DNA of 64,000 nucleotides from Ranitomeya imitator (Eukaryota): the NCBI RefSeq assembly GCF_032444005.1, contig NC_091283.1, positions 191,704,001-191,768,000 on the forward strand, written 5' to 3'. Positions 15,001-39,982 of this stretch are shown here, in pieces (within the stretch, counting starts at the first letter, position 1; each line of letters starts with the position of its first letter). The notes under the pieces are model-generated. The model ran no database searches and was not told where the DNA came from. It was given only the letters and a program-made list of their open reading frames with translations. The translations under genes and the position numbers were made by a program.

Positions 15001-18000
15001 CAACTTGAACACGGTGAACTCCAACCTGAACAACTACTATATCAATGATGTCAGCGACCTGATCGATGTAGGTGGCTCCTGCGGTTCTCTCCTTCATTCT
15101 GGATCATCAGTCATGCCCCCCTAGTAATGTTCCCACTTTTTCCCCGGCAGTGTTGTGATCTTGGCTTTCACCTTTCCCTTGGGAAGACTATGCGAGTATT
15201 CTTGCAGGCTGAGGAACGAGTTCAAGCCTCCCGACACCAAGGTCTTCAGGCCATTGAAGGGGCCGTTGACAACTTGGATGCACAGGCTGACAAACACAAG
15301 ATGATGGAGATGCGGGGTGACGCCTTCTGTCCTCCAGCACGATTTGAATTCCAGCCCCATGAGGGCGATGAGGTATGGAACCTGCTCGTCTTTTGGGGGC
15401 GTCCAAAATAAATATGTAGGTTTTTTTGTAAATACATATGTCATGTTCTTCTTCTCCAGGTGTTGGAGGTCCGATCTGAGCCACTTTTTCACCAAGAGCT
15501 GATCACCAGATTTCAACATATTCAATCGAGACTGGAAAGCGAGCATCTAGAGACTGAAGAGGTACGTTACACCTTAAAGGGATTATTACAAGTTGAGAAT
15601 TGGACTCTGAAATGCCCCGACGTACTGAAGTGGTGGCTGTAAATTTAGCATCTACTGTATAGGACTACGCTATTCAGTTATCTCCATCAGTCCTATGGAC
15701 TTTCGGACTGCTGGGGAGGAAAAACATGTGCTCTTTTTGGGGCAGATTTGTTCATGCATTATGGTTGTACCTATACTCCTTTCTAGACTTTGTTCGTATT
15801 GCTTTGCAGGACCCTGTCCTTCAGCCTTGTTAGTAATCTGTTGACACAGGGCGGGAGCCTTGAGAACCGCCTCCTACCTGATGGCATTCTTGGCCCTCCT
15901 TATGATTAGCAGGCCTGACACGGTGTGATATGTTCATCATGCCACAACGTTGACCTTGTGCCAGATCAGCTAATCAAAAGAGGAGCCGGTGGTGGCGAGA
16001 GGTAAGAGATGGTTCTCCTCCCGTGTGGCGGCCATAGATTACTGATGTGGCTGATGGACTGAGCCCGTGAATCGATTCACACCAACATTCCCATTATCCT
16101 TTCGCATGCCTCGGTTGAACCTGAGGGACATCTCAACAGAACCCTCACCAATTCCATTCTAAGTCACTGGTGTCCTTTGGACATTGGTCAATTCTGGTGG
16201 GGCCTATTATATAATAGATCCAGAATTGCATTGTTGTTGTTTCTATGTAATGGAAGTCAGAAAGAAAATGTGAGCAGAGCCTTATGCAGAATATTCAGTG
16301 TTACTGAGCAAGATTGACCAGGTTATGGGACATACGTATGGGTCCTCAACTTTATTCCATGCTTATTCATATATGTGATTCGTGGAGCTTAGCTGGATGA
16401 AATGAGGTGGGTCTGGGCATGGCAAATTACTGAAAATAATATGGAGGACCCTTTCACCACCAAACGTTGTAGAAAGCTAATTGAAATTGGGAGCAATCAA
16501 CATTTGCATTCTGAGCCTGTTTTCTTTTCAGGTGAACAAGACACTTAAGGCTACTCTCCAGTCTCTACTAGACCTCATTGGAGCAGATGACTTTGACTTG
16601 TCCGATGCATTTCAGTCCAGCCAGTCCACAGAATCCTTAAAATCCACGGGATCAGACACCAGCAGTAAGACAAGCACGGCAAAAAGACGGGCCAACCAGC
16701 AGGACACAGAGACCTTCTATGTTACGGTGAGAAGGAAATAGGTAGGAGAACAATATGGGGCTTGACCTTTTGAGGTCGGGGGCCATAAATGTGAGGACCA
16801 CACAGAAAAAAATGCAGTTATGACGGCCCTCAATGGAAGTTTGGGAAGAATTATATAAATGACCATTCAAAGATACCCAACAATGCCACCATTCAAGATC
16901 TACTCATTCTCCTGGTGTCTCACTACGGTTCCATTCACCAGGCTAATTGCCCATGTTGTACTTTAGCACAATAAGCTGTCACTCAACATCACTAGTAATT
17001 ACACGTCTTCATCCCATAGCAGCAAGTGAATGGGCCATTAGTCTGGTATGGAATGACTGGTTGTTAACCTAGATTCTTCAGGAGGGGCTGTCTGCTTTAT
17101 AAAACCCCCTTTTAAAGGCCCTCTTACGGAATTCAGTGTTAATAGAGGAGGATCCCGTATTCAAGACACTCAACAAAGGGCAACTCTTTCTCTGTGAAGG
17201 ACTTGGCGCATCCATGATCTACATGGACAAGGAATTAAAAGTATCTAGGACTTCAACATCAACCATCCTCATGATGAGAAATAGGTGGAGGTCCAAGCTC
17301 AGTTCAGTCTAATTTTTCTTAAATATCTGCTAAAGAAAACCCTTTTAATGATCTAATGTATCAATTTTGGCATCATCATGTGGAGATACTGTGCCGGTTG
17401 CAGAATTAGTAGGTGTAGAGTAACGTCCCGTGGATGGTCCCTGCTGTTCTGATGCTTCCATGTTTGGTGTAGCTGATATCTGCTTACTTGTATTTTTCTT
17501 TTCTGTTTTAGAAATTGCAGAAGTATCTTGCAGGGAGAAGCACTATATGTAAATTACAGTCAAAGCGAGACCGGCTGAAGGAAGCCATAGATAAAGGCAA
17601 GTGGATTGTGCTCAGTAGAACTTGGAGTTGTCCAGTTTCTGGTCAAATGTCTTCCAGTTTTTTGCCAAGAATCTCTAAATGATCCCGTAAACCTCAAAAG
17701 CAACGCTCTTCTCTTTCATAGGTTTGCATTGTCATTTACTTATGTGTCCGCCTCCCCAGCCATCCTCTAGCTCTGTTCACACTTGTGCAGAAGTGGGCAA
17801 AGCAAGAGAGCAGCTGGGCAAGCGGTATTGACCTCTGCCGCCATCTTCATTACTATGGATGGGGAGAGTGCTCGGTTCAATGCTAATGAAGACAATGATC
17901 ATGGGGGGCCTGACTTCTGACATGTGAAAATTTAGGAACCCTTTAAGGCTATTAGTGGCTGCCATCAAGATTGGTTATTTTGATCATATTGACACAAGAT

Positions 18001-21000
18001 TCCCTTCTATAAGTCTCCGCCATACCAGTAGAAGTTCTGGCAACCTGGTCAATACTGCTGCCTTCAAGATTGGGTATTTTGATCATATTGACACAAGGTT
18101 CCCTTCTATAAGTCTCCGCTATACCAGTAGAAGTTCTGGCAACCTGGTCAACACTGCTGCCATCAAGATTGGGTATTTTGATCATATTGACACAAGGTTC
18201 CCTTCTATAAGTCTCCGCTATACCAGTAGAAGTTCTGGCAACCTGGTCAACACTGCTGCCATCAAGATTGGGTATTTTGATCATATTGACACAAGGTTCC
18301 CTTCTATAAGTCTCCGCTATAACAGTAGAAGTTCTGGCAACCTGGTCAACACTTGGAGGAGGCCCTCCAGTTTTCACTGTCTCCTTTATATACAAGCTTG
18401 CTTGCACAGAACAGCGCCACTCTTGCCTTTATGTAGTTCCTGGTATTGCAGCTTACATCTAATGACTTAAAGTGTAACCATCTTTTTAATTTTTAGTTCA
18501 TAAATCAATAGTACACATGAAAATAAGAAACTTTGTAATATCTCTTATGAGATAACTCCTCTTCTTTCTCCTCCTGGACTGAACTTTCTATGTCAAAATT
18601 CTCAATTTACAGTTAAAATTTGCATTCATTGAAGACAAGTTTTCCCAGTACTGAGATAGGAGATGACAGTTGGTGCTCATAGTATTCTATGGAGGAGGCG
18701 GAGGCAGGCACAGACATTCTACTGCAAGTTCTCCTGAAACGACTGTTTACATTTTAAACATATAGTAAAAAAAAAGTTAAATTGTAACTATTTCAGGAGA
18801 ACTTGCAGTAGAATGTCTGTGTTGGCCTCTAGCTTCTCCTCTCTCCATAGAATTTTATAAGCACCAACTGTCACCTCCTATCTCAGTAGTGGAAAAATTT
18901 GTCTTTGCTGAACACAGATTTTTTTCCCCCGTTAATTGAGAGTGAAAGATTAGTAGTCCAGGAGGGGAAATAAGCAGATTTCTCTGATAAGATATATTAC
19001 AAAGTGTCTTATTCTCATAGATAATATTCATTTATGAAATGAGAATTGAAACCACTATTACTTTTTAAATGATTTTGAGCTGCAATACCAGACACAGCCT
19101 GTGGACCAGAGTGGCGCTGTTTCCCCAAAAAATCTTATGTAACCTTTTAAAGATAAAAATGTATTTTGTGTCCACTTATCTGTCCTTCTTTCCATTAAAT
19201 GATATTATAATAGCATATTATATAGCAAAGTACATCGAGATCTGCTAAGCAATGGTTATTTCCTAAGCTGCTCTAATAAGTAGATGTATTCAAATGATAT
19301 ATGAGAACAGCTGAGGAAGTTGCCGTATTTCTGTGTGTTCTGCAATTTCTCACTGTTTCCATTTTCCTCTGCAGCTGCTGAGTCACACAGTCACATCTCT
19401 GGGTATGTACGCTGTATGTTCTCTGTATTGGGGGGTACAGAGGAGGAACGGGAAGTAGAATCTTTAGCCGATATGGATTTATTTAGTATCCGTTAAAAAA
19501 ACATAAACCTCACACCACAAGGCAATGATTGACCCTGGTTCCTGCTTTCCCCACTGATTTCCTTTTCTTCTTATTACAAGGCTGCAAGTTAAATAAAAAA
19601 TGTTTTCTGTAGCCACCACTAGAGGGAGCCATAGAGCTCACAGCATACTGTTTTATCATGTAGACTGCTGAACTACTCAGCTCCCTCTAGTGGTGACTAC
19701 AGGTAGCTGACATTTTTAACTGTGCTTCTCAGCTCCCTATAGTGGTGACCACAGGCACACATAATTAGGTTATATCATTCAGTTCTATATATTCAGGGGA
19801 TTTGAAGCATTATATAAAAAACGTGTAATGTTGCTAAAATGTACAAAATGTTTTAGATCATAATAACAAAATATGGACATTTAACATTAAATTTTGTCCT
19901 TTGCTTTGGAGCTTTTGTATGGGTGACCAGTTGTTCCATTTGACAATATCTTGAGACCAGGGGAGAACCAGTCCCCTCCCATTATGGCAATCGGTGGGAT
20001 TAACCATTATGACCTATCCAATGGATAGTTAAGTAAATAAGGCAGCACACTGCAGCGCTAGAACATACAAACTTGAAAAACAAAATTTGAACTGCATTAC
20101 TGCACTAGAAATATGAAAAATGAGAGCTTATAGCGCATAAAAATGGCCAATTTTATGTGTACCTGGTAGCCCCTTTACGGCATCTCTCTTATACCAGGTC
20201 CTACACTTGCCTTACCTCGCTGAGAATAAACGTCTCCATCTGAATGGGTACATGTGAAACATCTTCTTAGACTAGAATTCTCTCTCTCTGTGGAGGGGTA
20301 TTAGACCTGCTGTAATTAAAACACCTGAAGCTAGGAGGTGGAGTGCACGATCAGAAGGCTAGAGAATACATTTCAAAAACCTGACCTGCACATCCAAACA
20401 TAGACTCAGTGTGAACAGGTGCTGAACCTAGAGTCACCAACTCGTATACAGTTAAGTAAATAAGGCAGCACACTGCAGCGCTAGAACATACAAACTTGAA
20501 AAACAAAATTTGAACTGCATTACTGCACTAGAAATATGAAAAATGAGAGCTTTTAGCGCATAAAAATGGCCAATTTTATGTGTACTTGATAGCCCCTTTA
20601 CTGCATCTCTCTTATACCAGGTCTACCAGGTACACATAAAATTGGCCATTTTTATGCGCTAAAAGCTCTCATTTTTCATATTTCTAGTGCAGTAATGCAG
20701 TTCAAATTTTGTTTTTCAAGTTTGTACGTTCTAGCGCTGCAGTGTGCTGCCTTATTTACTTAACTGTATACGAGTTGGCGACTCTAGGTTCAGCACCTGT
20801 TCACACTGAGTCTATGTTTGGATGTGCAGGTCAGGTTTTTGAAATCTATCCAATGGATAGTTGACGATTTATGTAGACTGGAATACCCCGATTGTTGCCC
20901 TTTTTGAATTTTGCTGCCCCTTAGTCCAGGATTAGAGAAAAAGTTATGTGTTTTTTTTCCCACCAAAACAGCGCCACTACTGGGCACAGGTTGTATCTGG

Positions 21001-24000
21001 TATTGCAGTGCATTCTTATTCATGTTTCGGGCTGAGCTGCAGTAAGGCATACAAAACTTAGACAAGACTGGCATTGTCTATAGGTGCAAAGCCAGCCGCT
21101 TTAATAAACAAAGCCTTTATTAAGCGGCGTGTATATAAAAGTAACCCTTGGAATTTTTTCCTTTTTTATTTGATCCTGTCTATTGGATACCATCCTGTTT
21201 AATGATAAATGACTCTAATAAAGTTTGTGTCTTTATGTAATGGAGGCCAGAATATCTTCTATGTTTATTGCCTCTGTTATATTATAAGGTAGGGGATACC
21301 GGCAAATTTGGCCGCAACACGGGTCCAGCATGACCAAAAATTGCAGTAGCAAAATGCAGGTCAATGGGGTTGCATTGCGACCCATGGGCTGCAATAAGTC
21401 ATAAAAAATCACAACCAATTGGATTTTTTGTGGTTTGGTTGTTGCGGTCACGGTACCCTACGGGTACCAACATGACCCCATTCACCTACATTATGCTGCA
21501 GCATAGAGCAATCTTTTTGCTGCTTTATCTGTGTTGCAACTTCAGTTGCCGCGTAGCCCCAGCCTTTATGTGAAGCGAGGATTTGCATGTGGGTGAATTG
21601 TATGTCCCACGGTTGGTTTCAGGCAGGAGTCCAGCACCAGTAAGTCTCAAAGGGCGAGAAGGCAGAGACCGTCCTCCCAGTATAACCACAAACTGTTTAA
21701 CGGGGACTTGGAGGAGTTTGTGCAGGTACCCGCCATATCTGCTGCCCTTTTCTTTGCTTCCTGATCTGGCTCATATTCCCTTTTGGGGAATTTACTGCAG
21801 TGTTGCTCGCTCCAGAAGCCTTCGCTGCATAGGACTCTCCCTGCCGGTGCAAATATCTATCACCTCGCTGCTGAATGATCTCACGGTCTGAGCTTCTGCT
21901 GCTGATAGGACCCTTATTTTAGGTTTCTCTTTTCCCTCTCTTATTCCACATGACCTTTTTTATTTCTGTATTTCAATTTTTATACCTAACACTGCCAGCC
22001 ACTCTTCCCCATGCCCCCATAGTGCCCGATATTGTACTTCCATATAAGTGCCAGCCTTAAAGGGGACCTGTCACTAATTCTGTCTTCTCTTGTTTTTCCC
22101 AAGAAATAACAATTCTCATGTATCTTTTTTTTCAATTCTGCGTTGTCCCATTCCTCTGATATTCCGCCTGGACATTTAGGAATAAATTGACAATAAGGTG
22201 TTACCTTTCACTTATGAAAGAAGTGTGTCCCCGCACAGTCCGACACTTTCAATGTTAGTGGACAGTAGCAGATTCGGTAGGCACACACTCCCTCAACAGG
22301 TAACCCATGTGAGTGGACCCTACTGTCTTAGCGTTTGTAACACATGACACAATGAAGCCTGATGCCTATTAAACTGTAAGTGATTGACTGCTGCCTTCAT
22401 GCATGGCACTTGCAACAGGATCATAAGTGGGTGCTGTTGTGCCTAATAGCTCAGCATTGATAAACCAACATATAGATGCTCAAATCTCTACTTTGGTGAC
22501 ATGCACCTTTTATTATGCCTCTATTTCATAGTTACCAACAGTCTGTGAGTATGCCGGGACTGTCTCTATTTTTTGGCAGTCTAGAAAAGCAGTGGAGCTT
22601 GCTTAATAAGGACCTGTCACTTGCTCTAAAAACTGAGTTAAATACCTTGGCAAAAATCTTCGCGTTCCCCTGATTATACCGCTCTTTTCCATTTTGCACT
22701 GCGTCGCTCCATTGCTGAGATATTAACATTTGTTGCTTTCAGATTGTAGTACGTGAAATCTCTGCTTGTAGCGCAACTGGGCGTTTCTTCAGAGTCTTCT
22801 CTGGGGCGTGTGCCTTCGCTCATCCCTCCCACACGCTGCCAATCACAGCTCGGCATCCAATTCTGCAGTCTGTCAGACTCAAAGGCTGCCTAGCTATGAT
22901 TTGCAGTGTCTGGGAGTGAAGGATGATAGCACGTGACCCAAACCACATTGAAAACTCTGAAGAATCGCTCAGTTGGTCTACAAGAAGAGATTTCACATAC
23001 TGCGATCCAGAAGAAACAAATATGAATTTATCGGAAATGGAGCAACACAGCGCAAAATAGCGAAGTGGCACAAAATCCCCGTCACTCATTTTTTTAAAAA
23101 AGGTATTGAGCTCAATCTCTTGGATCAAGTGACACGTCAGCTTTAAACCACACCACAGAGTTGAAGGTTGCATCCAGTTTAGCTTTCACTGAGCTGAGCT
23201 GGACTAAATCAGCAAAGTTAGTATATATACAGTCTGTATTTTGCCCTCTTTTTGCTCACACAAGGAACTTTATCTTTAAAACCTCTTATCACCTATCACT
23301 CGTCATTATCTCTCTTCCTCTGCGTAATCTCTACTTCTTCCCTTTTGCCCACCCATATTTACTTCCCTTCTCATGTTGCACCATTCTACAGTATGTGCTC
23401 TGCTTTCTATGTCTTGTGTGACCCTATCTGTATTGAAAACGTGTTATACAGCATATTACTGCGGGTATAATGGGATAAACCTACAAATATCCATACATAA
23501 ATGATTGTAATGGGGTGATGATGAAGAAAAGGGACCTAAACTTTTAAGGGCACCTACTTATTCCTTTATAAAGGTATGCTCTTGAGTTAGCGCTACAGAT
23601 TTTTAAAGGGTGATTCCATTTACCATTTATAATATTTATAATGAATATCAATAGTACAAAAACGACCCTACATTAAATCCCATAGTTATTTTATGACATT
23701 GGTCATTCTTATTTCCAAGTCTCCCGTTACATCTGAGGACAGTGCACAGATTTGGCGATGCTTCACCCTGTGTTCATTAAAGTTTCTTCTGTAATATAGA
23801 TGATAATTCAGCAGGAGTATGGATGTTGCGTTATCCAAAATTTGAGGTAGTCTTAAAAAAAAAACAAAAGATTCCTATGAAGCCAAGCCTAGATTTGGAT
23901 TGATCACAAGATCCTCCATGAGACCTTCCTGAAAATGTTCCCGGCCTCCTCCATCTAGAGCATGACACCTTCCTGAAGATTCCCCTGACCACCTACATGT

Positions 24001-27000
24001 GTAGCATAACACCTTCCTGACAGTTCTGACCCCCTTCATTTGTAACATGACATCTTCCTAAAGGTACCCTTGACCTCCTCCACATGTAGCATGACACCTT
24101 CTTGAAAGTTCTTCTGACCTCCTTCACCTGAAGCATGACACCTTCTTGAAGGTTCTCCTGGTCTCCTCCATGTGGAGCATGACACCTTTCTGAAGGTTTC
24201 CCAGACCTCCTTCACATGTAGCATAACACCTTCTTGAAAGTTCTTCTGACCTCTTTCACCTGAAGCATGACACCTTCTTGAAGGTTCTCCTGGTCTCCTC
24301 CATGTGGAGCATGACACCTTTCTGAAGGTTTCCCAGACCTCCTTCACATGTTGCATGACAGCTTCTTGAAAGTTCTTCTGACCTCCTTCACCTGAAGCAC
24401 GACACCTTCTTGAAGGTTCTTCTGGTCTCCTCCATGTGGAGCATAACACCTTTCTGAAGGTTTCCCAGACCTTCACATGTAGAATGACACCTTCTTGAAA
24501 GTTTTTCTGGTCTCCTTCATCTGTAGCATGACACCTTCCTGAAGTTTCCCCTGTCCTCCTCCACCTGTAACATGACACCGTATAGAAGGCTCTCCTGGCC
24601 TCCTCCACCTGTAGCTTAATACCTCCTTGAAAGTTCCCCTGACCTCCTTCACATGTAGCATGACAACTTCTTTAAAGTTCTTCTGACCTCCATCATCTCT
24701 AGCATGTCACTTTTCTGAAGATTCCCTTGACCTCCTCCACGTTCAGCATGACACCTGCTTGAATTTCTTGTGGCCTCCACCATGTGTAGCATAATACCTC
24801 CCTGAAGGTTCCCCTGTCCTCCTCCACCTGTAGCATGCTTCCTTCCTGAAAGTTCCCCTGACCCCCTGTATTTGTAGCACCAGAGCTTCTTAAAGGTTTG
24901 TTCTGTAGTATGACATCTTCTTGTAGGTTCTCCTGGCCTCCTCAATCTGGAGCATGACACCTTCATGTCCTGGATGGTTGCATCATGATCCACCTTGTCC
25001 CCCTCGCTGTTGCTGTGTATTTGATCTTATAGAGGGGGAGATTTATTTATACGGAAGCAGACCAGGACAAATCTTGATACCTACAGACACTGAGGGCATC
25101 ATAATCCAAAGAAGCGACCACTTTGGACTTCACAGATCGGGAATTAGAAATTGACTTATAGTTTTGCTAGGCTCTTAACTTTCTCATCTACAAAAATGTA
25201 CTTTTTTGATTTTTTTTTTTTGTATTCTGCACTTGAATTTGCTAAATCTGAAGCCTACCTCTGCTTTCTATAAGTGTCATATTGACTCTGCACTATTTAC
25301 TATGAGTGATTTCCCTTCCGATATCCCTTGCGCGATCACAGGAGCCTCATTCTGCTTGTGCTTCCAATTAACCCTTTACAGACCGATCCTCTCTTTGTCC
25401 TTCCCCCCCCCCTCAACTCTGCTTGCAGGAGACGGCGGTACCTGTCCCGAGCCAAGGTACATTTCAGTAATTCTTCTCTTCATGCATGGCTTTCAGCGCT
25501 GTTGTGTCTGCTTGTAGTCTTCATTGTTGCTTTATTTTCCAGTTGGTTATTTCATATGTCATCTTATTGTTTTCTGTATGGTTAGAGGTTGTGGGATTAA
25601 ATAGTAATGGCCAGAAGTAGAACATTCACCAGGACTCTGCCCCTGCATAGCTCCCATCCAGCCAATGATCTCTATGATCAGCCCAGGAGGTCTGGCCAGA
25701 TAGGAGCCACTTGGTCTTTAATTAAGGAGCATTTTGTGGGTCTGTGTCTCAAGTTTTTGTTTGCCCCTGTTTTCCAAAAACCTACAATATCAGAAGTTTT
25801 AATCGGTGGTGGTCAGAGCGTTGAGACCCCCGATCGCTGAAACAAAGAGAAGAAGGACACTCTAAACGAGTGTTGAGTCCTATTGAGACTACTCAATAGA
25901 AAGTCAATGAACTTGTCGTTAGCAAACGCTGCCTCTCCTAGTTTCAGCCTCTTCCTCTTTCAGGACGACACTGATCATAACTTCTGTCATTTATGCCAAA
26001 AGTTTTTTTTTTAATTACTTTTATTTTTTTTCCGAAGAGGTGCTTTGCAGAATACAAATTATTATCTAAAGTGTTCAGATGGGTTACAAATAATAAAATA
26101 ATTTAATATTTATCCTCACTAATCCACTGTAATTCCCGTTCTGCACTTTCGCAGTCCGTGATAGTCTGCGCTGCCTGGTCCCGTTCTCGACACACTGGAA
26201 GGACGGGACCAAAAAGAACAGATGAGCAAGGACTGGGTTAGGGACTGAACTGGAGCTGCCGGGGTTCTAAGAGCACAAATTATTGATAATTTTAATATTT
26301 TTAGCAGTCTGAACACTTTAAAATCATCTTTTTCCCCAGAATGCCCCTTTAAACTGAACGCAGAAAAGATGCTAGCTACTTCCTTTTTCACCGATGTAAC
26401 CATTAAGCCACACTTCTGAGCAATCCCTGTTTTTAAGTTATTAAAAAAATATTTTCAACCAGTCTGAACACTTAAATGTTTTTATTTTCCCCCAGAAAAT
26501 GCCCCTTTAAACAAAATTAGAGTAGGAGGAGAAGCTAGCTACTTCCTTCTTCATGGATGTAACCACTGAGCTACACTTCCAAGCAATCCTTCTTTTTAAA
26601 ATCGATAAAAAAATATTTTTAACCAGTCTGAACACTTGAAAAAATGGTTTTATTTTCCCCAGAATTCCCCTTCAAACCAAATTAGGAGGAGAAGCTAGCT
26701 ACTTCCTTCCTCCCCGATTTAACCATTGAGCCACACTTCCAAGCAATCCCTGTTTCAGTTCATAAAAAATATTTTTAACCAGTCTGAATGCTTAATTTAA
26801 AAAAAAAAATGTTCCTCAGAGATGTCGCTTTAAATAAAACTAGGAGGAGAAGCTAGCTACTTCCTTCTTCACCGATGTAACCACTGAGCCACACTTCTAA
26901 GCAATCCATGTTTTCCAACGTGATAAAAATGATCGCTCTATAGGCTCCAACCTAGATTGAAGTCATTGTCACATCTTATCTAATGAATAGTTAAAGGGAT

Positions 27001-30000
27001 TGTCCAGGCTTAGAAAAACATGGCTGCCCTCTTTCAGAAATCTAGCTAACACGGCTGTGATGGCAGATGTCCATGTCTTGCCGGAGTGACACTTTATATA
27101 CTCCTCGTGATAGCAGCCGAGGAAGTATTTTCTTGTAAAAAAACAAACAGGATGTGGCGAGAGGTGGCATCACGTTCTTCTATTCTGGAGGAAGTCGGCC
27201 AAACACATCACTGTATTGAATGGCTTCTCGGAAGGCTTAGTTGTCCCATGGTTCAATGGTCTCCAAGACTGCGTGAAGACTTCCCAAGACTTCCCCGTGT
27301 TGCAGGCAGCTGAATAGTTGTGTATGTAGGGTGGACTCTGGTAGAATACTGATTGGTAGCCCCCTTCCGTTGTATTTAGTTTATCATGGGCTTCATTGGC
27401 TTTCCCCATCCTTTCCCCCCACCGTGTATTTCTGCCCGGTCAGCAGTTATAGCCGCTAATCTCAACGTAGTGACAATGATACCAAAGACTAAGACGTCTT
27501 CCGGCCTGCTCATGCCATTTTCTTGTCTTTTCTCTTGGTGTCTCGACCACCCAGAGTTCAGGAGAAGCCATTCCACGGGTCGTATCGAGCTGTATCCGCT
27601 TCATAAACCTGCACGGTGGGTAAACTCGTCAGAGGCAACTGATATGGCATCAATAACTAAGGGTGAAGAATTTGCTAAATCTGCGATCAATAATCAAGGT
27701 TTTTTGGGGGGAAACTCCTTATTTTCATCTTAAAGATAACCTATCACTTGCCGTAAATACATCATTATTTTTACCTGGTGTAAATGCCGCCGTTCTCCTG
27801 AATCCGGCGATGTTTTTCTTTTGTTCCTGCGCCTCTCCGTTCCTGAGCTACGGCCTCTTCTTCCCTATATAGAAATCTAGTCTTGATAGCCAAGGGGGTG
27901 TGATTCTTAAAACGACTCGCAGAGAAAAAGTTTAGGATCGCGCCCACTTCTATAACAAATCGTTGTTGTACTCCTCTTCTTCGTCCATTCTGGAGATGTT
28001 GCCTCCTGTTCCTTGTATATAAATCTAGTCTTGTTAGCCAAGGAGGCTTGGTCCTCTGGTCTCCTCCTCCTGTGGGCGTTTTCTCGATGACCACACCCAC
28101 TTGCCCAACAATTCTAAATTTGTATATGTAGAAATGGGGCCATATCTCAGGAATGGAGAGGCGCAGGAACAAAAGAAAAACATCGCCGGATTCAGGAGAA
28201 CAGCGGCATTTACTCAGGATAAAAATATTTCACATTTATGGGAAGTGACAGGTTCCAATTTAAAGATCTGTCTTGTGCTTTGCTGCTGTATGTAATGACA
28301 TGTGACGAGTATTTGTGACATTTTTGGCGTATACTTTTCTATAGGTCTACAGCACGAGGGTATATTCCGTGTCCCAGGGTCACAGGCCCAGGTGAATGAG
28401 ATTCGCAGTGCCTTTGAAAGAGGTTCGTATAACATAAGGGTGACACTGACGGAAAAATGGGGATAGATTACCTTCTGGGCCACAATCTCGGAATGTAGGA
28501 CTTTTAACAACACTGCTGTTTTATTTTTTTTTATGCCACTTTTGCTATTTATGTCACTTATGCATTTACATTCATGGTAACTACATATAGAACACAGTTT
28601 ATCAGGATTCTTTTCCCTTGTGCTATATTTGCTATGGAGTGGCGCCATCTACTGGTGACATGTTGAATGGCATGATATTGTTAGCGTTTTATATTATTTA
28701 TTTTCCATAAATCAATAATAATAGGAAACTAATTAGAAAAAAAATATGTTTCTTTCTCCTGTTCTCCTGATCTTTCACTATTCAATTTACTGGTAAAATC
28801 TTTATTCAGTGAAGGCGATAACAATAACAGTTGCTGCTCGTAAAACTCTATGGAGGAAGAAGGAGGAGTTAGAGGAGTGACAGCAGAATGTCTGTCTGGC
28901 TCCTCCCCCTCCATAGAACTTTATAAGCACCAACTGCCATTTCCTGCTTGAGTAATGGAAAGGTCTGTCTTCACTGAAGACATAGGTTACAGATTTTATT
29001 GTAACCATGAATTGAGAATAAATGATCAGTCCTGAAGGAGAAAATAGCTGATTTCTCTGATGAGATATATTATAAAAATGATTATGTTAACTCGTAAAAT
29101 AGAAAATTCAAACCGTAGTTACTTTATAACATTTTTTTTTAGGTATGTATTAAAGGTCTGTTCTCTTATATATAATACCACTTATCAAGCTGATAAAAAC
29201 GGGTTCATTTCCCTTCAATTAAAGCAACCTTTAATAGCTGCATACATAGTGATACCTAGTGCACCGCCCCTTTAAGCCCTGCCTTCTCACTGTCTACTTG
29301 TTACTGGCTCTGGGGACATAGTAAACCTTCCTGAAATGACACCTTTTTGGGTCTTTTGGGATTTTTCCAACAGGCGGACTAATCTGTGCTCCTTTCCAGG
29401 TGAGGACCGGTTGGACTCCAGCTACACAGGGAATGATGTGGACTCGGTGGCGGGGGTCCTGAAGCTGTACTTCCGGGGACTGGAGAAGCCGTTATTTCCA
29501 AAAGACATGTTCAACGAATTACTGTCCTCTCTCCGTGAGTGTATTCTATCTACAGTGGACATGTTGGGAGTGGCTGGATGTGTCACCAGATCACACATAT
29601 AAGCTGCATACATGATCAAATACAGCTCTTACACCTGATTACACTGGTATATTTACTATGAAAATTCATGTCAGAATGGCTGACACTCTTTTGAAAGTTT
29701 TCCTGACTAATATTAAAATGAGCATTTTACAACTCCAGCTGGAGCAGTACAGCCCCCATTGGGTTGCCCATAGTTTTGCGCCCCCTAACCCGTATGCCGT
29801 TATCACTGCCATCAACCAGGCTAGCATTGCTCACCTTATACCCCAAGCACATGAATTGTTTTTTAAGAAAATACTGCTATATTTATATTTTGTCTTTTGG
29901 CCCTCTATATTTTTTCTGCTTTTTATTTTTACTTACATACAACGCAAAATGTAAAATGTAAAAACTTAGTTATAATTTTTTTTATCTTATTTACACCTAC

Positions 30001-33000
30001 ATTTTTATGTAACTATTTCATTACCTTATCCCTAACCCTGGCCCTGATCCTAGCCCTTACCCTAGCCACATCATAGCCACCACTCTAGCACTAACCCTAG
30101 CCCCTACTATAGCCCTAACCCCAATCCTAGCCCTAACTCTACCTCCATTATAGCCCCCACTACAGCACTAACTCTAGTCCTCACCGTTCCCCAAATTCTA
30201 GCCCCCACCCTAGCACTAATCCTAACCCCAATCCTAGCACTAACCCTAGCCCCATCTTATCCACCACTCTGGCCCCAACCCTAGCCCCAATCCTAGCCCC
30301 CACTCTAGCCCCAACCATAGCCCCAATCCTAGCCCCCACTCAAGAACTTACCCTAGCCCTCACACTTGCCCTGATCCATCCCCGATCCTAGCCCCTACCC
30401 TAGCCCTAACCCTAGCTCTCCTAGCCCCCACTCTGGCACTAACCCTAGCCCCGATCCTAGCCCCCACTCTAGCCCTAACCTAACCTGTTGTGAATTCTGT
30501 TATCGAACTCCCTCCTGTGGTCATGAATGGTACTTCGGCGAGTTCTGTCCATGGACTCCCTCTGGTGGCTGTGAGTTGTGCTGCTGCTTCTGAGGTACCT
30601 TCCTCAGGTGACGGAGTTTATTCGTTGGCTGGCTGCTCTATTTAACTCCACTCAGATCGTTACTCCATGCCAACTGTCAATGTTCTTGTACTGGTTCAAT
30701 TCGCTCTTGGATCTTTCTGGTGACCTGTCTACTCCAGCAGAAGCTAAGTCCCTGCTAGTTATTATTTGTTCATTGTTTTCTCGTCCAGCTTGCTGTCATG
30801 ATATTGTTTTGCTAGCTGGAAGCTCTGGGATGCAGAGTGGCACCTCCGCACCGTGAGTCGGTGCGGAGGTCTTTTTGCACACTCTGCGTGGTCTTTTTGT
30901 AGTTTTTTGTGCTGACCGCAAAGATACCTTTCCTATCCTCAGTCTGTTTAGTAAGTCGGGCCTCTCTTTGCTGAAACCTGTTTCATTTCTGTGTTTGTGA
31001 CTTTCATCTTTACTCACAGTCAATGTGTGTGGGGGGCTGCCTTTTCCTTTGGGGAATTTCTCTGAGGCAAGGTGGGCTTTATTTTCTATTTCTAGGGCTA
31101 GTTAGCTCTTAGGCTGTGAAGAGGCGTCTAGGCCGTGTTAGGTACGCTCCACGGCTATTTCTAGTTGTGTGATAGGATTAGGGGTTGCGGTCAGCAGAGT
31201 TCCCACTTCCCAGAGCTTGTCTTGTGTGAGTTTAACCATCAGGTCGTTCCTGGTGCTCCTAACCACCAGGTCCATAACAGTACAGCTGGCCCAAAGTATT
31301 AATGCATCTCAATAGAGGGATAAGAGAAGTTCTGAGACCATTTTTTTTTCTTTGCAGTGTGTTTTGTCTTTCTTTTCCCCTTAACCTTTGGGTGGTTTAA
31401 GACACAGGTGTAAATATGGACATTCAAGGTCTGTCCTCTTGTGTAGATCATCTCACTGCAAGGGTACAAAACATTCAAGATTTTGTGGTTCAGAATCCGA
31501 TGTTAGAGCCTAGAATTCCAATTCCTGATTTGTTTTCTGGGGATAGATCTAAGTTCCTGAATTTCAAAAATAATTGTAAATTGTTTCTAGCTTTGAAACC
31601 CCGCTCCTCTGGTAACCCCGTTCAACAAGTAAAAATCATTATTTCTTTGTTGCGTGGTGACCCTCAAGACTGGGCATTTTCCCTTGCGCCAGGAGATCCT
31701 GCATTGCGTGATGTAGATGCGTTTTTTCTGGCGCTTGGATTGCTTTATGATGAACCTAATTCAGTGGATCAGGCAGAGAAAATCTTGCTGGCTTTGTGTC
31801 AGGGTCAGGATGAAGCGGAGGTGTACTGTCAGAAGTTTAGAAAGTGGTCTGTGCTTACTCAGTGGAATGAGTGTGCCCTGGCGGCAATTTTCAGAAAGGG
31901 TCTTTCTGAAGCCCTTAAGGATGTCATGGTGGGATTTCCCACGCCTGCTGGTCTGAATGAGTCTATGTTCTTGGCCATTCAGATCGATCGGCGCTTGCGT
32001 GAGCGCAAAACTGTGCACCATTTGGCGGTATTCTCTGAGCATAGGCCTGAGCCTATGCAGTGTGATAGGACTTTGACCAGAGTTGAACGGCAAGAACACA
32101 GACGTCAGAATGGGCTGTGTTTTTACTGTGGTGATTCCACTCATGCTATCTCCGATTGTCCTAAGCGCACTAAGCGGTTCGCTAGGTCTGCCACCATTGG
32201 TACGGTACAGTCTAAATTTCTTTTGCCGCTACTCTGATTTGCTCTCTGTCGTCCTATTCTGTTATGGCATTTGTGGATTCAGGCGCTGCCCTGAATTTGA
32301 TGGACTTGGAGTTTGCCAGGCGCTGTGGTTTTTTCTTGGAGCCCTTGCAGCATCCTATTCCATTGAGAGGAATTGATGCTACGCCTTTGGCCAAGAATAA
32401 GCCTCAGTACTGGACTCAATTGACCATGTCAATGGCTCCTGCACATCAGGAGGATATTCGCTTTTTGGTGTTGCATAATCTGCATGATGTGGTCGTTTTG
32501 GGGTTGCCATGGCTACAGGTCCATAATCCAGTTTTGGATTGGAAATCTATGTCTGTGTCCGGCTGGGGTTGTCAGGGGGTACATGGTGATGTTCCATTGC
32601 TGTCAATTTCGTCTTCCACTCCTTCTGAAGTCCCTGAGTTTTTGTCAGATTACCGGGATGTATTTGAAGAGCCCAAATCCGGTGCACTACCTCCTCATAG
32701 GGATTGCGATTGTGCTATTAATTTGATTCCTGGTAGTAAGTTTCCTAAGGGCCGACTGTTTAATTTATCTGTGCCAGAGCACGCCGCTATGCGGAGTTAT
32801 ATAAAGGAATCCTTGGAGAAGGGTCATATTCGCCCGTCGTCATCACCGTTGGGAGCTGGGTTCTTTTTTGTGGCCAAGAAGGATGGCTCTTTGAGACCTT
32901 GTATTGATTACTGCCTTCTTAATAAGATAACAGTCAAATTTCAGTACCCTTTGCCGCTGCTGTCTGATTTGTTTGCTCGGATTAAGGGGGCTAGTTGGTT

Positions 33001-36000
33001 CACCAAGATAGATCTTCGAGGGGCGTATAATCTTGTGCGAATTAAACAGGGCGATGAATGGAAAACAGCATTTAATACGCCCGAGGGCCATTTTGAGTAC
33101 CTGGTTATGCCATTCGGGCTTTCTAATGCTCCATCTGTGTTTCAGTCCTTTATGCATGACATCTTCCGAGAGTACCTGGATAGATTCATGATGGTATATT
33201 TGGATGATATTTTGGTCTTTTCGGATGATTGGGAGTCTCATGTGAAGCAGGTCAGAATGGTGTTCCAGGTCCTTCGTGCGAATTCCTTGTTTGTGAAGGG
33301 GTCGAAATGTCTCTTTGGAGTTCCGAAGGTTTCATTTTTGGGTTTCATTTTTTCACCTTCTACTATCGAGATGGACCCTGTTAAAGTTCAGGCCATTTAT
33401 GATTGGACTCAGCCTACATCTGGGAAGAGCCTGCAGAAGTTCCTGGGCTTTGCTGATTTTTACCGTCGCTTCATCGCTAATTTTTCTAGTGTTGCTAAAC
33501 CGTTGACTGATTTGACCAAGAAAGGTGCTGATGTGGTCAATTGGTCCTCTGCGGCTGTAGAGGCTTTTCAGGAGTTGAAGCGTCATTTTTCTTCTGCCCC
33601 TGTGTTGTGCCAGCCAGATGTTTCACTTCCGTTTCAGGTCGAGGTTGATGCTTCTGAGATTGGAGCAGGGGCTGTTTTGTCGCAAAGAAGTTCTGATTGC
33701 TCGGTGATGAAACCATGTGCCTTCTTTTCTAGAAAATTTTCGCCTGCTGAGCGCAATTATGATGTTGGCAATCGAGAGTTGTTGGCCATGAAGTGGGCAT
33801 TCGAGGAGTGGCGACATTGGCTTGAAGGAGCCAAGCATCGCGTGGTGGTCTTGACAGATCACAAGAATTTGACTTATCTCGAGTCTGCCAAACGGTTGAA
33901 TCCTAGACAGGCTCGATGGTCGCTGTTTTTCTCCCGTTTCGATTTTGTGGTTTCGTACTTTCCGGGCTCTAAGAATGTGAAGGCTGATGCCCTGTCAAGG
34001 AGTTTTGTGCCTGACTCTCCGGATGTTCCTGAGCCGGCGGGTATTCTCAAAGAGGGGGTAATTTTGTCTGCCATCTCCCCTGATTTGCGGCGTGTGCTGC
34101 AGAAATTTCAGGCTGATAGACCTGACCGTTGCCCAGCGGAGAAACTGTTTGTCCCTGATAGATGGACTAGTAGAGTTATCTCTGAGGTTCATTGTTCGGT
34201 GTTAGCGGCTCATCCGGGAATCTTTGGTACCAGAGATTTGGTGGCTAGATCCTTTTGGTGGCCTTCTTTGTCACGGGATGTACGTTCTTTTGTGCAGTCC
34301 TGTGGTACTTGTGCTCGGGCTAAGCCCTGCTGTTCTCGTGCCAGTGGGTTGTTTTTGCCCTTGCCGGTCCCGAAGAGGCCCTGGACGCATATTTCCATGG
34401 ATTTTATTTCAGATCTCCCTGTCTCTCAAAGGATGTCGGTCATTTGGGTGGTTTGTGATCGCTTCTCTAAGATGGTCCATTTGGTACCCTTGTCTAAATT
34501 GCCTTCTTCCTCTGATTTGGTGCCATTGTTTTTCCAGCATGTGGTTAGTTTGCATGGCATTCCGGAGAACATCGTCTCGGACAGAGGTTCCCAGTTCGTT
34601 TCGAGGTTTTGGCGGTCCTTTTGTGCTAAGATGGGCATTGATTTGTCTTTTTCTTCGGCTTTCCATCCTCAGACAAATGGCCAAACCGAACGAACTAATC
34701 AGACTTTGGAAACATATCTGAGATGCTTTGTTTCTGCTGATCAGGATGATTGGGTGTCCTTCTTGCCTTTGGCTGAGTTCGCCCTTAATAATCGGGCCAG
34801 CTCGGCTACTTTGGTTTCGCCTTTTTTCTGTAATTCTGGTTTCCATCCTCGTTTCTATTCAGGGCAGGTTGAGTCTTCGGACTGTCCTGGTGTGGATACT
34901 GTGGTGGACAGGTTGCAGCAGATTTGGACTCATGTGGTGGACAATTTGACATTGTCCCAGGAGAAGGCTCAACGTTTCGCTAACCGCCGGCGCTGTGTGG
35001 GTCCCCGACTTCGTGTTGGGGATTTGGTTTGGTTGTCGTCTCGTCATGTTCCTATGAAGGTTTCCTCTCCTAAGTTTAAGCCTCGTTTCATTGGTCCGTA
35101 TAAGATTTCTGAAGTTCTCAATCCTGTGTCATTTCGTTTGGCCCTTCCAGCTTCTTTTGCCATCCATAATGTGTTCCATAGGTCGTTATTGCGGAGATAC
35201 GTGGCGCCTATGGTTCCCTCCGTTGATCCTCCTGCCCCGGTGTTGGTCGAGGGGGAGTTGGAGTATGTGGTGGAGAAGATTTTGGATTCTCGTATTTCGA
35301 GACAGAAGCTCCAGTACCTGGTCAAGTGGAAGGGTTATGGTCAGGAAGATAATTCCTGGGTTTTTGCCTCTGATGTTCATGCTGCCGTTCTAGTTCATGC
35401 CTTTCATTTGGCTCGTCCTGATCGGCCTGGGGGCTCTGGTGAGGGTTCGGTGACCCCTCCTCAAGGGGGGGGGGGTACTGTTGTGAATTCTGTTATCGAT
35501 CTCCCTCCTGTGGTCATGAATGGTACTTCGGCGAGTTCTGTCCATGGGCTCCCTCTGGTGGCTGTGAGTTGTGCTGCTGCTTCTGAGGTTCCTTCCACAG
35601 GTGACGGAGTTTATTCGTTGGCTGGCTGCTCTATTTAACTCCACTCAGATCGTTACTCCATGCCAGCTGTCAATGTTCTTGTACTGGTTCAATTCGCTCT
35701 TGGATCTTTCTGGTGACCTGTCTACTCCAGCAGAAGCTAAGTCCCTGCTAGTTATTATTTGTTCATTGCTTTCTCGTCCAGCTTGCTGTCATGATTTTGT
35801 TTTGCTAGCTGGAAACTCTGGGATGCAGAGTGGCACCTCCGCACCGTGAGTCGGTGCGGAGGTCTTTTTGCACACTCTGCGTGGTCTTTTTGTAGTTTTT
35901 TGTGCTGACCGCAAAGATACCTTTCCTATCCTCAGTCTGTTTAGTAAGTCGGGCCTCTCTTTGCTGAAACCTGTTTCATTTCTGTGTTTGTGACTTTCAT

Positions 36001-39000: not shown

Positions 39001-39982
39001 TGACTCATCCAGGAGGTCACAAAAGACCCCACAACAACATCCAAAGAACTGCAGGCCTCACTTGCCTCAGCTAAGGTCACTGTTCATGACTGCACCATAA
39101 GAAAGAGACTGGGCAAAAATGGCCCGCATGGCAGAGTTAAAAGACGAAAACCACTACTGAGCAATAAGAACATAAAAGCTCGTCTCAGCTTTGCCAGAAA
39201 ATATCTTGATGATCCCAAGACTTTTGGGAGAATACTCTGTGGACTGACAAGACAAAAGTTGAACTTTTTGGAAGGTGTATGTCCCACTACATCTGGCGTA
39301 AGTATAACACAGCATTTTAGAAAAGGAACATCATACCAACAGTAAATTATGGTGGTAGTAGTGTGATGGTCTGGGGCTATTTTGCTGCTTCAGGACCTGG
39401 ATGACTTGCTGTGGAACCATGAATTCTGCTGTCTACCAAAAATCCTGAAGGAGAATGTTCGGCCATCTATATGTGACCGCAAGCTGAAGTGCACTTGGGT
39501 TAAGCAGCAGGACAATGATCCAAAATACACCAACACTATATAGTCTGACGGGAACAATTAAAAGTAGATTGGACCTTTCAGTGTGTTTCCGGGCCTTGTT
39601 GTAACTATACCTGACTTTTGCTGTGTGCTGTAGCTATACCGCAACCTTTCACTGCATGACCCAACCCGAGGATACGCCATTACTGTGCAGAATGTGACTA
39701 TGATGGGGTATTATTTTTTATGCCTTATGAAAGTTTTATTTTTAATCACTAAAATTAATATCTATCATTTCATTTAGTGATACGCTAGCCCTGGAGGCGA
39801 CCATTGAAGAAAGCGATCAAGAGATGCAGCAGGAAATGGCTGTCAGCGAGGATGGTAAGAAAATGCTATACTATTATCTATTATCTATCATTTATCTATT
39901 ATCTATCTGCCTATCTATCTATTATCTTTCTATTATCTATCTATTATTTATCTATCCTATTATCTATCTATTATCAATTATT

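What the first reader, a model, noticed from the sequence alone, without database searches (positions are those of the whole stretch)
25382..25490. Hidden mutually exclusive basic microexon in ARHGAP4 with neural-splicing motifs and a frame-rescuing second acceptor
Seen: the 28-nt exon 25429-25456 has the same phases (2 to 0) as the 103-nt exon 21623-21725, so either alone keeps the frame: ...[23 protein letters not shown] sits right before the AG (ctctgcttgcag) and TGCATG lies 27 nt downstream. A second AG at 25380-25381 gives a 75-nt phase 0-0 exon in the same RRRYLSRAK frame, compatible with including both exons. Established: UGC near the 3' splice site is an SRRM4 microexon motif and downstream UGCAUG is an RBFOX inclusion enhancer. 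From memory, SRGAP1/SRGAP3 have a short SRGRRN... exon alternative to the long exon at this position. Inference: this is an ancestral switch of the F-BAR/GAP linker retained in amphibian ARHGAP4.
Basis: partly seen in the sequence, partly recalled or inferred. Interest (0 to 1): 0.7.

Follow-up and report, generated by a model that had tools for sequence, protein, structure and literature searches.

The report
Known alternative micro-exon in frog ARHGAP4
The 28-base exon is real and is used instead of the neighbouring 103-base exon, but this splice form is already annotated in poison frogs and many other vertebrates, so it is an old, known switch and not a hidden one.

Summary
In detail: 25429-25456 is a 28-nt AG/GT-flanked exon with the same phases as the 103-nt exon 21623-21725, with UGC just before the acceptor and UGCAUG at +28.

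It is a real exon.
- One RNA contig in one public run (X1) joins 25456 to 27555 exactly.
- The predicted junction [20 protein letters not shown] is already RefSeq isoform X2 of Ranitomeya imitator ARHGAP4. That protein matches this window's exons residue for residue.
- The same short isoform is annotated in about 20 other frogs, salamanders, squamates and ray-finned fishes.
- Fish SRGAP1 has the same long/short exon pair in the same order and phases.

So the "ancestral switch" idea is supported, but "hidden" and "retained in amphibians" are not.

Using both exons, or neither, gives a premature stop, so the reading frame enforces mutual exclusion. The long exon encodes the first ordered segment of the RhoGAP domain. 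The micro-exon replaces it with a short basic peptide.

UGCAUGGCU at +28 is shared with a teleost, and UGC near the acceptor is present in all five ARHGAP4 loci. Tissue specificity could not be tested.

The proposed second acceptor (75-nt exon) has no read, isoform or frame-conservation support. It looks like part of the branch-point region.

Verdict: real, ordinary, already known.

The parts
19375..19402 (+). Upstream constitutive 28-nt exon (AAESHSHIS + GG of a split Gly codon). It is the donor partner for either alternative exon.
   Evidence: Loose ends at 21622 in runs X2 and X6 read ...CTGCTGAGTCACACAGTCACATCTCTG, which is this exon joined to the long exon.
21623..21725 (+). Long alternative exon, 103 nt, phase 2->0. 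It encodes (G)[34 protein letters not shown]. Its last ~17 residues are the first ordered segment of the RhoGAP domain.
   Evidence: The joint 21725->27555 is present in all four runs. PDB alignments to 2osa, 6gvc and 3cxl cover [16 protein letters not shown]. In the AlphaFold model these residues have pLDDT of about 78-89 and include a helix.
25351..25428 (+). Conserved intron block upstream of the micro-exon: ctgcttgtgcttccaattaaccctttacag (likely branch-point region), then a long pyrimidine tract, then ctctgcttgcag.
   Evidence: Nearly identical in Engystomops and partly so in Spea. The branch-point assignment is an inference.
25380..25381 (+). More likely it is the AG just after a ttaCag/ttaTag branch-point motif, and is not used.
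   Evidence: No joint to 25382. No protein with both segments. The AG lies at -49, -45 and -52 in three frogs, giving 75, 71 and 78 nt, so it is out of frame in Engystomops. There is no AG within 120 nt in Anolis or within 150 nt in Coilia.
25420..25426 (+). Two UGC triplets (25420-25422 and 25424-25426) between the pyrimidine tract and the acceptor AG.
   Evidence: TGC lies within 5-14 nt of the acceptor in all five ARHGAP4 loci, but not in Betta SRGAP1.
25429..25456 (+). Alternative micro-exon, 28 nt, phase 2->0. It encodes (G)RRRYLSRAK and is mutually exclusive with 21623-21725.
   Evidence: A contig joint 25456->27555 (GT..AG) in run X1. It matches residues 475-483 of R. imitator isoform X2, P0271, at 100%. 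Orthologous 28-nt exons exist in Engystomops, Spea, Anolis and Coilia.
25483..25491 (+). UGCAUGGCU, an RBFOX-type (U)GCAUG element 28 nt downstream of the micro-exon.
   Evidence: TGCATGGCT sits at the same offset in the teleost Coilia, and CGCATGGCT in Engystomops. The element has degenerated in Spea and Anolis.
27555..27616 (+). Downstream constitutive exon ([21 protein letters not shown]), helix A of the RhoGAP domain. It is the acceptor partner of both alternative exons.

Best explanation
25429-25456 is a genuine 28-nt alternative exon of the srGAP-family gene ARHGAP4, in a dendrobatid frog whose exons are identical to Ranitomeya imitator ARHGAP4.

The exon is spliced between 19402 and 27555 in place of the 103-nt exon 21623-21725. 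Both exons are 1 mod 3. Transcripts with both or with neither are therefore frame-shifted and run into an early stop, and would be expected to be removed by nonsense-mediated decay. Only either/or mRNAs are productive.

The long exon supplies a Ser/Arg-rich linker plus the first ordered segment of the RhoGAP domain ([16 protein letters not shown]). The micro-exon replaces all of this with a 9-residue basic peptide (RRRYLSRAK). In that form the F-BAR extension is joined almost directly to GAP helix A.

The choice of exon is probably regulated by three features:
- a distant branch point with a long pyrimidine tract;
- UGC next to the acceptor (SRRM4-type);
- a conserved downstream UGCAUG (RBFOX-type), combined with weak gtac donors on both exons.

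The pair is ancient. It occurs in ARHGAP4 from ray-finned fishes to squamates and in fish SRGAP1, so it predates the srGAP paralogues. It is already in public annotation.

Shown: the exon, its junction to 27555, either/or usage, the frame logic, the orthologues and paralogue, and the motif conservation.
Inferred: NMD, the regulators, the tissue pattern, and the effect on GAP activity.
For: RNA:
- Run X1 has a contig joint 25454->27553, which with the cut +2 is 25456->27555 (GT..AG). Its shorter side of 27 letters corresponds to 25428-25454.
- The canonical joint 21725->27555 is in all 4 runs.

Annotation:
- P0271 (XP_069604523.1, R. imitator isoform X2, 953 aa) reads [20 protein letters not shown] and lacks the long segment. 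R. variabilis X3/X4 and Phyllobates terribilis X2 do the same.
- The window's exons match P0270/P0271 with mismatches only at HSP ends, whereas D. tinctorius P0001 has internal mismatches.
- 21 of the top 120 hits, all frogs, carry RRRYLSRA[QK].
- Squamates, salamanders, gar, sturgeon, paddlefish and teleosts have RRRLLARK, RSRCLSRIQ or RRRRMSRTQ at the same place.

Genomes:
- The order up, long, micro, down and a 28-nt phase 2->0 micro-exon are found in Engystomops, Spea, Anolis and Coilia.
- Betta SRGAP1 has a 34-nt short exon in the same phase after a long exon.
- Fish SRGAP1 X1 and X3 isoforms differ by exactly this swap.

Frame: both exons give a stop in the exon 28346-28424, and neither gives a stop in 27555-27616. 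None of 485 proteins has both segments.

Flanks: the intron is conserved for about 80 nt on each side. UGC and UGCAUGGCU are conserved.

Structure: the long-exon tail aligns to solved RhoGAP N-termini and is ordered in the model. The micro-exon peptide has pLDDT below 50.
Against: - The RNA evidence in this species is one contig in one run. The tool flags that joint 'between: not known', and X1's RNA status is a guess.
- The upstream junction 19402->25429 was not seen, because 19402 lies outside the 6-kb stretch I could lay.
- X2, X6 and X7 show only the long form. Contigs drop minor variants, so this is not evidence of absence.
- RefSeq X-isoforms are computed models.
- The tissue of every run is coded, so 'neural' is untested.
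- UGCAUG is absent within 150 nt in Spea, Anolis and Betta SRGAP1.
- The AlphaFold models rest on shallow alignments of 45 sequences (mean pLDDT 75 and 67), so the structural reading is weak.
Confidence: 0.9

Rival explanations
1. The segment is a chance AG..GT open stretch in a long intron, or an occasional cryptic exon, with no biological role.
For: 380 frame-preserving open AG..GT segments lie between the flanking exons. Only one contig in one of four runs shows the joint.
Against: The same 28-nt exon, in the same phase and position, is kept from a teleost to lizards and frogs. About 80 nt of intron is conserved on each side. It is annotated as a coding isoform in dozens of species. A paralogous short exon exists in SRGAP1.
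Confidence: 0.02
2. The exon is real but works: a second acceptor at 25382 gives a 75-nt exon that allows productive mRNAs carrying both the long exon and the basic peptide.
For: The 75-nt version is open and in frame here. A 78-nt equivalent is open in Spea. The AG is kept in three frogs.
Against: There is no joint 21725->25382 in four runs. None of 485 srGAP-family proteins has both segments. The equivalent in Engystomops is 71 nt and out of frame, and the AG is absent in Anolis and Coilia. The extension is a pyrimidine tract, so an open frame costs nothing. The AG sits right after a ttaCag/ttaTag motif that looks like the branch point.
Confidence: 0.05
3. The exon is real, but its main role is to lower ARHGAP4 protein output. 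Co-inclusion with the long exon would send transcripts to decay, a poison-exon-like use, and the short protein isoform would not matter.
For: Inclusion of both exons gives a premature stop. Both exons have weak gtac donors.
Against: The peptide itself is conserved: RRR..SR.. in fishes, salamanders and frogs, and RRNSHARHQ in SRGAP1. The length is kept at 28 nt. No both-exon joint was seen. Micro-only full-length isoforms are assembled from transcriptomes (Logan-derived P0185, P0186 and P0429).
Confidence: 0.03

Closest known systems
RefSeq ARHGAP4 short isoforms, e.g. XP_069604523.1 (Ranitomeya imitator isoform X2), XP_077139764.1/XP_077139765.1 (R. variabilis X3/X4), XP_073495930.1 (Phyllobates terribilis X2)
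   Same: The junction peptide [20 protein letters not shown] is identical, the long segment is absent, and the protein is 25 aa shorter. The window's exons match the R. imitator protein exactly.
   Different: Nothing that I could find. The finding is this isoform read from the genome. I could not confirm that the window comes from that very assembly.
SRGAP1 long/short alternative exons, seen in fish isoforms X1 versus X3 (a human brain single-cell splicing study reports an 'MXE of exon 12 of SRGAP1' in microglia, PMC10548223; its position was not checked)
   Same: Same position between the F-BAR extension and RhoGAP helix A. Same order, long then short. Same phases, 2->0. The long exon ends in RLFNGNLESFIK and the short exon is a basic peptide, SRGRRNSHARHQ.
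   Different: The short exon is 34 nt, not 28. In Betta its flanks are CU-rich, with no UGC near the acceptor and no GCAUG within 150 nt. From memory only, the short form is the canonical one in mammalian SRGAP1-3.
Neural micro-exons controlled by SRRM4 and RBFOX (a recalled class, not tested here)
   Same: A short exon (28 nt) with UGC between the pyrimidine tract and the AG, a downstream UGCAUG and strongly conserved flanking introns, in a gene for a cytoskeletal signalling protein.
   Different: It is one base over the strict 3-27 nt definition. It is not a multiple of 3, so it is not a simple cassette. It is paired with a second exon. Neural inclusion and dependence on SRRM4 or RBFOX are unknown.
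Frame/NMD-enforced mutually exclusive exon pairs (a general class recalled from the FGFR2 IIIb/IIIc literature)
   Same: Each exon alone keeps the frame, and double inclusion or double skipping gives a premature stop.
   Different: The two exons are not duplicates of each other (103 versus 28 nt, unrelated peptides apart from an Arg-rich stretch). The intron between them is long here (3.7 kb), so steric hindrance plays no part.

Membership tests
srGAP family / ARHGAP4 orthologue | F-BAR (FCH) + RhoGAP + SH3 architecture, with closest kin named ARHGAP4 | tested here: met
   The closest proteins carry PF00611, PF00620 and SH3 Pfam hits and are named rho GTPase-activating protein 4. The window's exons are identical to R. 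imitator ARHGAP4.
Mutually exclusive exon pair (frame-enforced) | Two neighbouring internal exons, each of which alone preserves the frame | tested here: met
   103 nt and 28 nt, both 1 mod 3, and both give open products.
Mutually exclusive exon pair (frame-enforced) | Both together, or neither, give a premature stop | tested here: met
   With both, the stop falls in exon 28346-28424. With neither, it falls in 27555-27616. NMD itself was not tested.
Mutually exclusive exon pair (frame-enforced) | Transcripts or isoforms carry one exon or the other, never both | tested here: met
   Among the collected proteins, 132 are long, 193 short and 0 have both. The joints seen are 21725->27555 and 25456->27555, with none from 21725 to 25429 or 25382.
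Mutually exclusive exons of the tandem-duplicate type | The two exons are similar in length and sequence (homologous duplicates) | tested here: not met
   By inspection: 103 versus 28 nt, and the peptides share only an Arg-rich stretch.
SRRM4-type neural micro-exon | Length 3-27 nt (strict) or up to 51 nt (broad) | tested here: inconclusive
   At 28 nt it meets the broad limit and misses the strict one by one base.
SRRM4-type neural micro-exon | UGC motif just upstream of the 3' splice site | tested here: met
   UGC at -9 and -5 here, and within 5-14 nt in all five ARHGAP4 loci. That this motif marks SRRM4 targets is recalled knowledge.
SRRM4-type neural micro-exon | Neuron-specific inclusion and dependence on SRRM4 | not testable with these tools
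   Run tissues are coded, and only one read-laying run was allowed.
RBFOX-enhanced exon | (U)GCAUG in the proximal downstream intron, conserved | tested here: met
   TGCATGGCT at +28 here and in Coilia, and CGCATGGCT in Engystomops. It is lost in Spea and Anolis.
RBFOX-enhanced exon | RBFOX binding and RBFOX-dependent inclusion | not testable with these tools
   No CLIP or knock-down data were reachable.

The most novel reading that the evidence does not exclude
The long/short exon pair is a vertebrate-wide srGAP-family switch that predates the paralogue split. It adds or removes the first ordered segment of the RhoGAP domain under a UGC/UGCAUG code kept for about 400 million years. ARHGAP4 lost it in at least one placental mammal. 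Its effect on GAP activity or on F-BAR/GAP coupling has never been studied: my few full-text searches found only one passing mention of a splice event in a paralogue (an SRGAP1 exon-12 MXE), whose position I did not check.
Probability: 0.45. Interest if true: 0.4.

Novelty: already known. Interest (0 to 1): 0.2.

Why it matters
The exon itself adds nothing to public annotation.

For srGAP biology there is a modest point. Most functional work uses one isoform per gene, yet the family carries an old either/or choice at the entrance of the GAP domain. ARHGAP4 of non-mammals keeps both options, while the one placental intron I read shows no micro-exon. Comparing the GAP activity, autoinhibition and membrane behaviour of the two forms would be a cheap experiment.

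Tried and rejected
1. I tried to fetch orthologous loci from Xenopus tropicalis (P0202: not on record), Bombina, Microcaecilia and Hymenochirus (genes of 118-387 kb: no DNA), and wallaby and wombat (file too large). The comparison therefore rests on Engystomops, Spea, Anolis, Coilia, Betta SRGAP1 and one rhinoceros.

2. Literature searches combined srGAP names with micro-exon, splice variant, isoform names and splicing regulators. They gave only one relevant line, 'MXE of exon 12 of SRGAP1'. A look for the UGC motif in PMC7697094 found nothing.

3. I considered and rejected the second-acceptor model (see rival explanations).

4. I considered steric hindrance and U2/U12 incompatibility as the cause of mutual exclusion. 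I rejected both by inspection: the intron between the exons is 3.7 kb here, and all sites are ordinary GT-AG.

5. I first took the genome for Dendrobates tinctorius because the cluster representative P0001 carries that name. I corrected this after exon-by-exon comparison.

6. I did not rank isoform abundance from contig depths. In X1 both joint contigs have a depth of about 27, but the tool warns against reading depths this way.

7. I did not search the joined (spliced) model of this window anywhere. Natural annotated proteins were used instead.

Full report
**What is at the site**

- 25429-25456 is GAGACGGCGGTACCTGTCCCGAGCCAAG, 28 nt, preceded by ctctgcttgcag and followed by gtacat.
- The upstream exon 19375-19402 ends with two bases of a Gly codon.
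- The 103-nt exon 21623-21725 and the 28-nt exon are both 1 mod 3. Either one alone reads through into 27555-27616 ([21 protein letters not shown]).
- TGC lies at 25420 and 25424, and TGCATG at 25483.

Sequence alone does not make the case.
- 380 open, frame-preserving AG..GT segments lie between the flanking exons.
- The candidate ranks second of these on a crude splice-site score.

**Which gene and which genome**

An F-BAR exon of the window (15151-15375) finds a 978-aa protein, and the family around it is ARHGAP4 with FCH, RhoGAP and SH3 domains. The cluster representative is named for Dendrobates tinctorius. Exon by exon, however, the window agrees with Ranitomeya imitator ARHGAP4 (P0270/P0271): the only mismatches are at HSP ends that run into introns. 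The D. tinctorius protein has ten internal mismatches. The window is therefore R. imitator or something very close to it.

**RNA evidence**

Nine public runs hold parts of the locus, all stored as contigs with coded names and with 'RNA' only guessed. I laid four of them on 21610-27609.
- All four show the canonical joint 21725->27555.
- Run X1 also has a contig joint 25454->27553, GT..AG with the cut two bases to the right. That is exactly 25456->27555. The shorter side is 27 letters, the size of the micro-exon.
- In X1 both joints have short sides, as expected for two branches of an assembly bubble. In the other three runs the long-exon contig runs on undisturbed.
- No joint from 21725 to 25429 or to 25382 appears.

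Limits of this evidence:
- It is one contig in one run.
- The tool marks that joint 'between: not known'.
- The partner 19402 lies outside the 6 kb that could be laid.
- Tissues are unknown.

**Annotation already holds this isoform**

R. imitator isoform X2 (XP_069604523.1, 953 aa) reads ...[29 protein letters not shown]... and lacks the 34 residues of the long exon. R. variabilis X3/X4 and Phyllobates terribilis X2 do the same.
- In a search with the long form, 21 of the top 120 hits had RRRYLSRA[QK]. All were frogs, from Xenopus and Hymenochirus to ranids and hyloids, and some were assembled from transcriptomes.
- A search with the short form added squamates (RRRLLARKK), salamanders (RSRCLSRIQ), gar, sturgeon, paddlefish and many teleosts (RRRRMSRTQ).
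- None of the 485 proteins collected carries both segments.

**Genomic comparison**

I could fetch DNA for ARHGAP4 of Engystomops, Spea, Anolis sagrei, Coilia and a white rhinoceros, and for SRGAP1 of Betta.
- In the four non-mammalian ARHGAP4 loci the order is upstream exon, long exon, micro-exon, downstream exon. The micro-exon is 28 nt, starts GAG and ends AG|gtac.
- About 80 nt of intron on each side is nearly identical between the window and Engystomops.
- TGC lies 5-14 nt before the acceptor in all five ARHGAP4 loci.
- TGCATGGCT starts at +28 both here and in the teleost Coilia, and CGCATGGCT in Engystomops. The element has decayed in Spea and Anolis. An identical 9-mer at an identical offset across that distance is unlikely to be chance.
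- The rhinoceros intron between the long and downstream exons is only about 640 nt and holds nothing like the micro-exon.

**The paralogue**

Fish SRGAP1 isoforms X1 and X3 differ by 24 aa in seven of the ten species pairs compared (23 and 25 in two others)...YMTT-RHPNG...RLFNGNLESFIK-DSGQAIP versus ...YMTT-SRGRRNSHARHQ-DSGQAIP. In Betta the short exon is 34 nt, phase 2->0, and lies downstream of the long exon. A human single-cell splicing study lists an 'MXE of exon 12 of SRGAP1' (PMC10548223). Invertebrate srGAPs in the representative set show only the long type.

It is not an amphibian peculiarity.

**How it works**

Shown by computation:
- Including both exons shifts the frame and gives a stop in exon 28346-28424.
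- Including neither gives a stop inside 27555-27616.

Only either/or mRNAs are productive. Removal of the others by NMD is inferred.

The last ~17 residues of the long exon ([16 protein letters not shown]) align with the N-terminal segment of solved RhoGAP domains: chimaerins 2osa and 3cxl, and ARHGAP12 6gvc. They are confidently ordered, with a helix, in an AlphaFold model. The Ser/Arg-rich first half of the exon is disordered. In the short form the nine basic residues have pLDDT below 50. Both models rest on only 45 sequences.

The switch therefore decides whether the GAP domain has its leading segment or is tied to the F-BAR extension by a short basic linker. Both exons carry an Arg-rich stretch followed by Ser (RRQRPSS; RRRYLS), which looks like a basophilic kinase site. 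That is an inference, and squamates have Ala at that place.

The regulation is also inferred. The conserved ttaaccctttacag block 50 nt upstream looks like a distant branch point followed by a long pyrimidine tract. UGC next to the AG fits SRRM4-type control, and UGCAUG downstream fits RBFOX-type enhancement. Both alternative exons have weak gtac donors.

**The second acceptor**

AG at 25380-25381 does give an open 75-nt phase 0-0 exon here. But:
- no read joint uses it;
- no protein has both segments;
- the equivalent extension is 71 nt, out of frame, in Engystomops, and 78 nt in Spea;
- Anolis has no AG within 120 nt and Coilia none within 150 nt.

The extension is a pyrimidine tract, where stop codons are rare anyway. 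I read this AG as part of the branch-point motif.

**Verdict**

What remains open is its tissue pattern and what it does to the protein.

**Rule compliance**

I did not send the joined spliced model of this window to any search.

Noticed in passing
window 14592-43510 (exons): The window's ARHGAP4 exons are residue-for-residue identical to Ranitomeya imitator XP_069604522.1/XP_069604523.1. They differ at about ten internal positions from the Dendrobates tinctorius protein that heads the cluster. The genome is therefore R. imitator or a very close relative.
   Followed up: yes
window 30500-36330: A full-length Gypsy-type LTR retrotransposon sits in an ARHGAP4 intron. It has a 1140-aa open frame at 32216-35635 and near-identical ends around 30575-31300 and 35568-36300.
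   Followed up: partly
window 24500-24867: A tandem array with a 44-nt unit (about 8 copies, 71% alike) lies in the intron between the long exon and the micro-exon.
   Followed up: no
window 22847-22961: In run X2 one contig laid here differs at 14 places, mostly A>G (10 of them). The region is a high-depth repeat (22610-23009). This is either A-to-I hyper-editing of a repeat transcript or a paralogous repeat copy.
   Followed up: no
window 22610-23009 and 26810-27209: Intronic stretches have contig depth many times that of the flanks in all four runs, and many loose ends. They look like expressed interspersed repeats, not ARHGAP4 sequence.
   Followed up: no
window 38761-39540: Open-frame pieces resembling a Tc1/mariner-type transposase (…[27 protein letters not shown]…) lie in a downstream ARHGAP4 intron.
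   Followed up: no
window 19375-19402: The constitutive exon just upstream is itself only 28 nt. An older R. imitator gene model (P0273, CAJ0935670.1) skips it (…EAIDKGKQESS…), which looks like an annotation error caused by the exon's small size.
   Followed up: partly
L004 (Spea bombifrons ARHGAP4): RefSeq 'isoform X1' of Spea is only 540 aa yet carries the micro-exon peptide (P0416). This is possibly a truncated short-form transcript.
   Followed up: no
L006 13265-13909 (white rhinoceros ARHGAP4): The intron between the long exon and the next exon is about 640 nt and has no recognisable micro-exon. This suggests loss of the short form in at least this placental mammal.
   Followed up: partly
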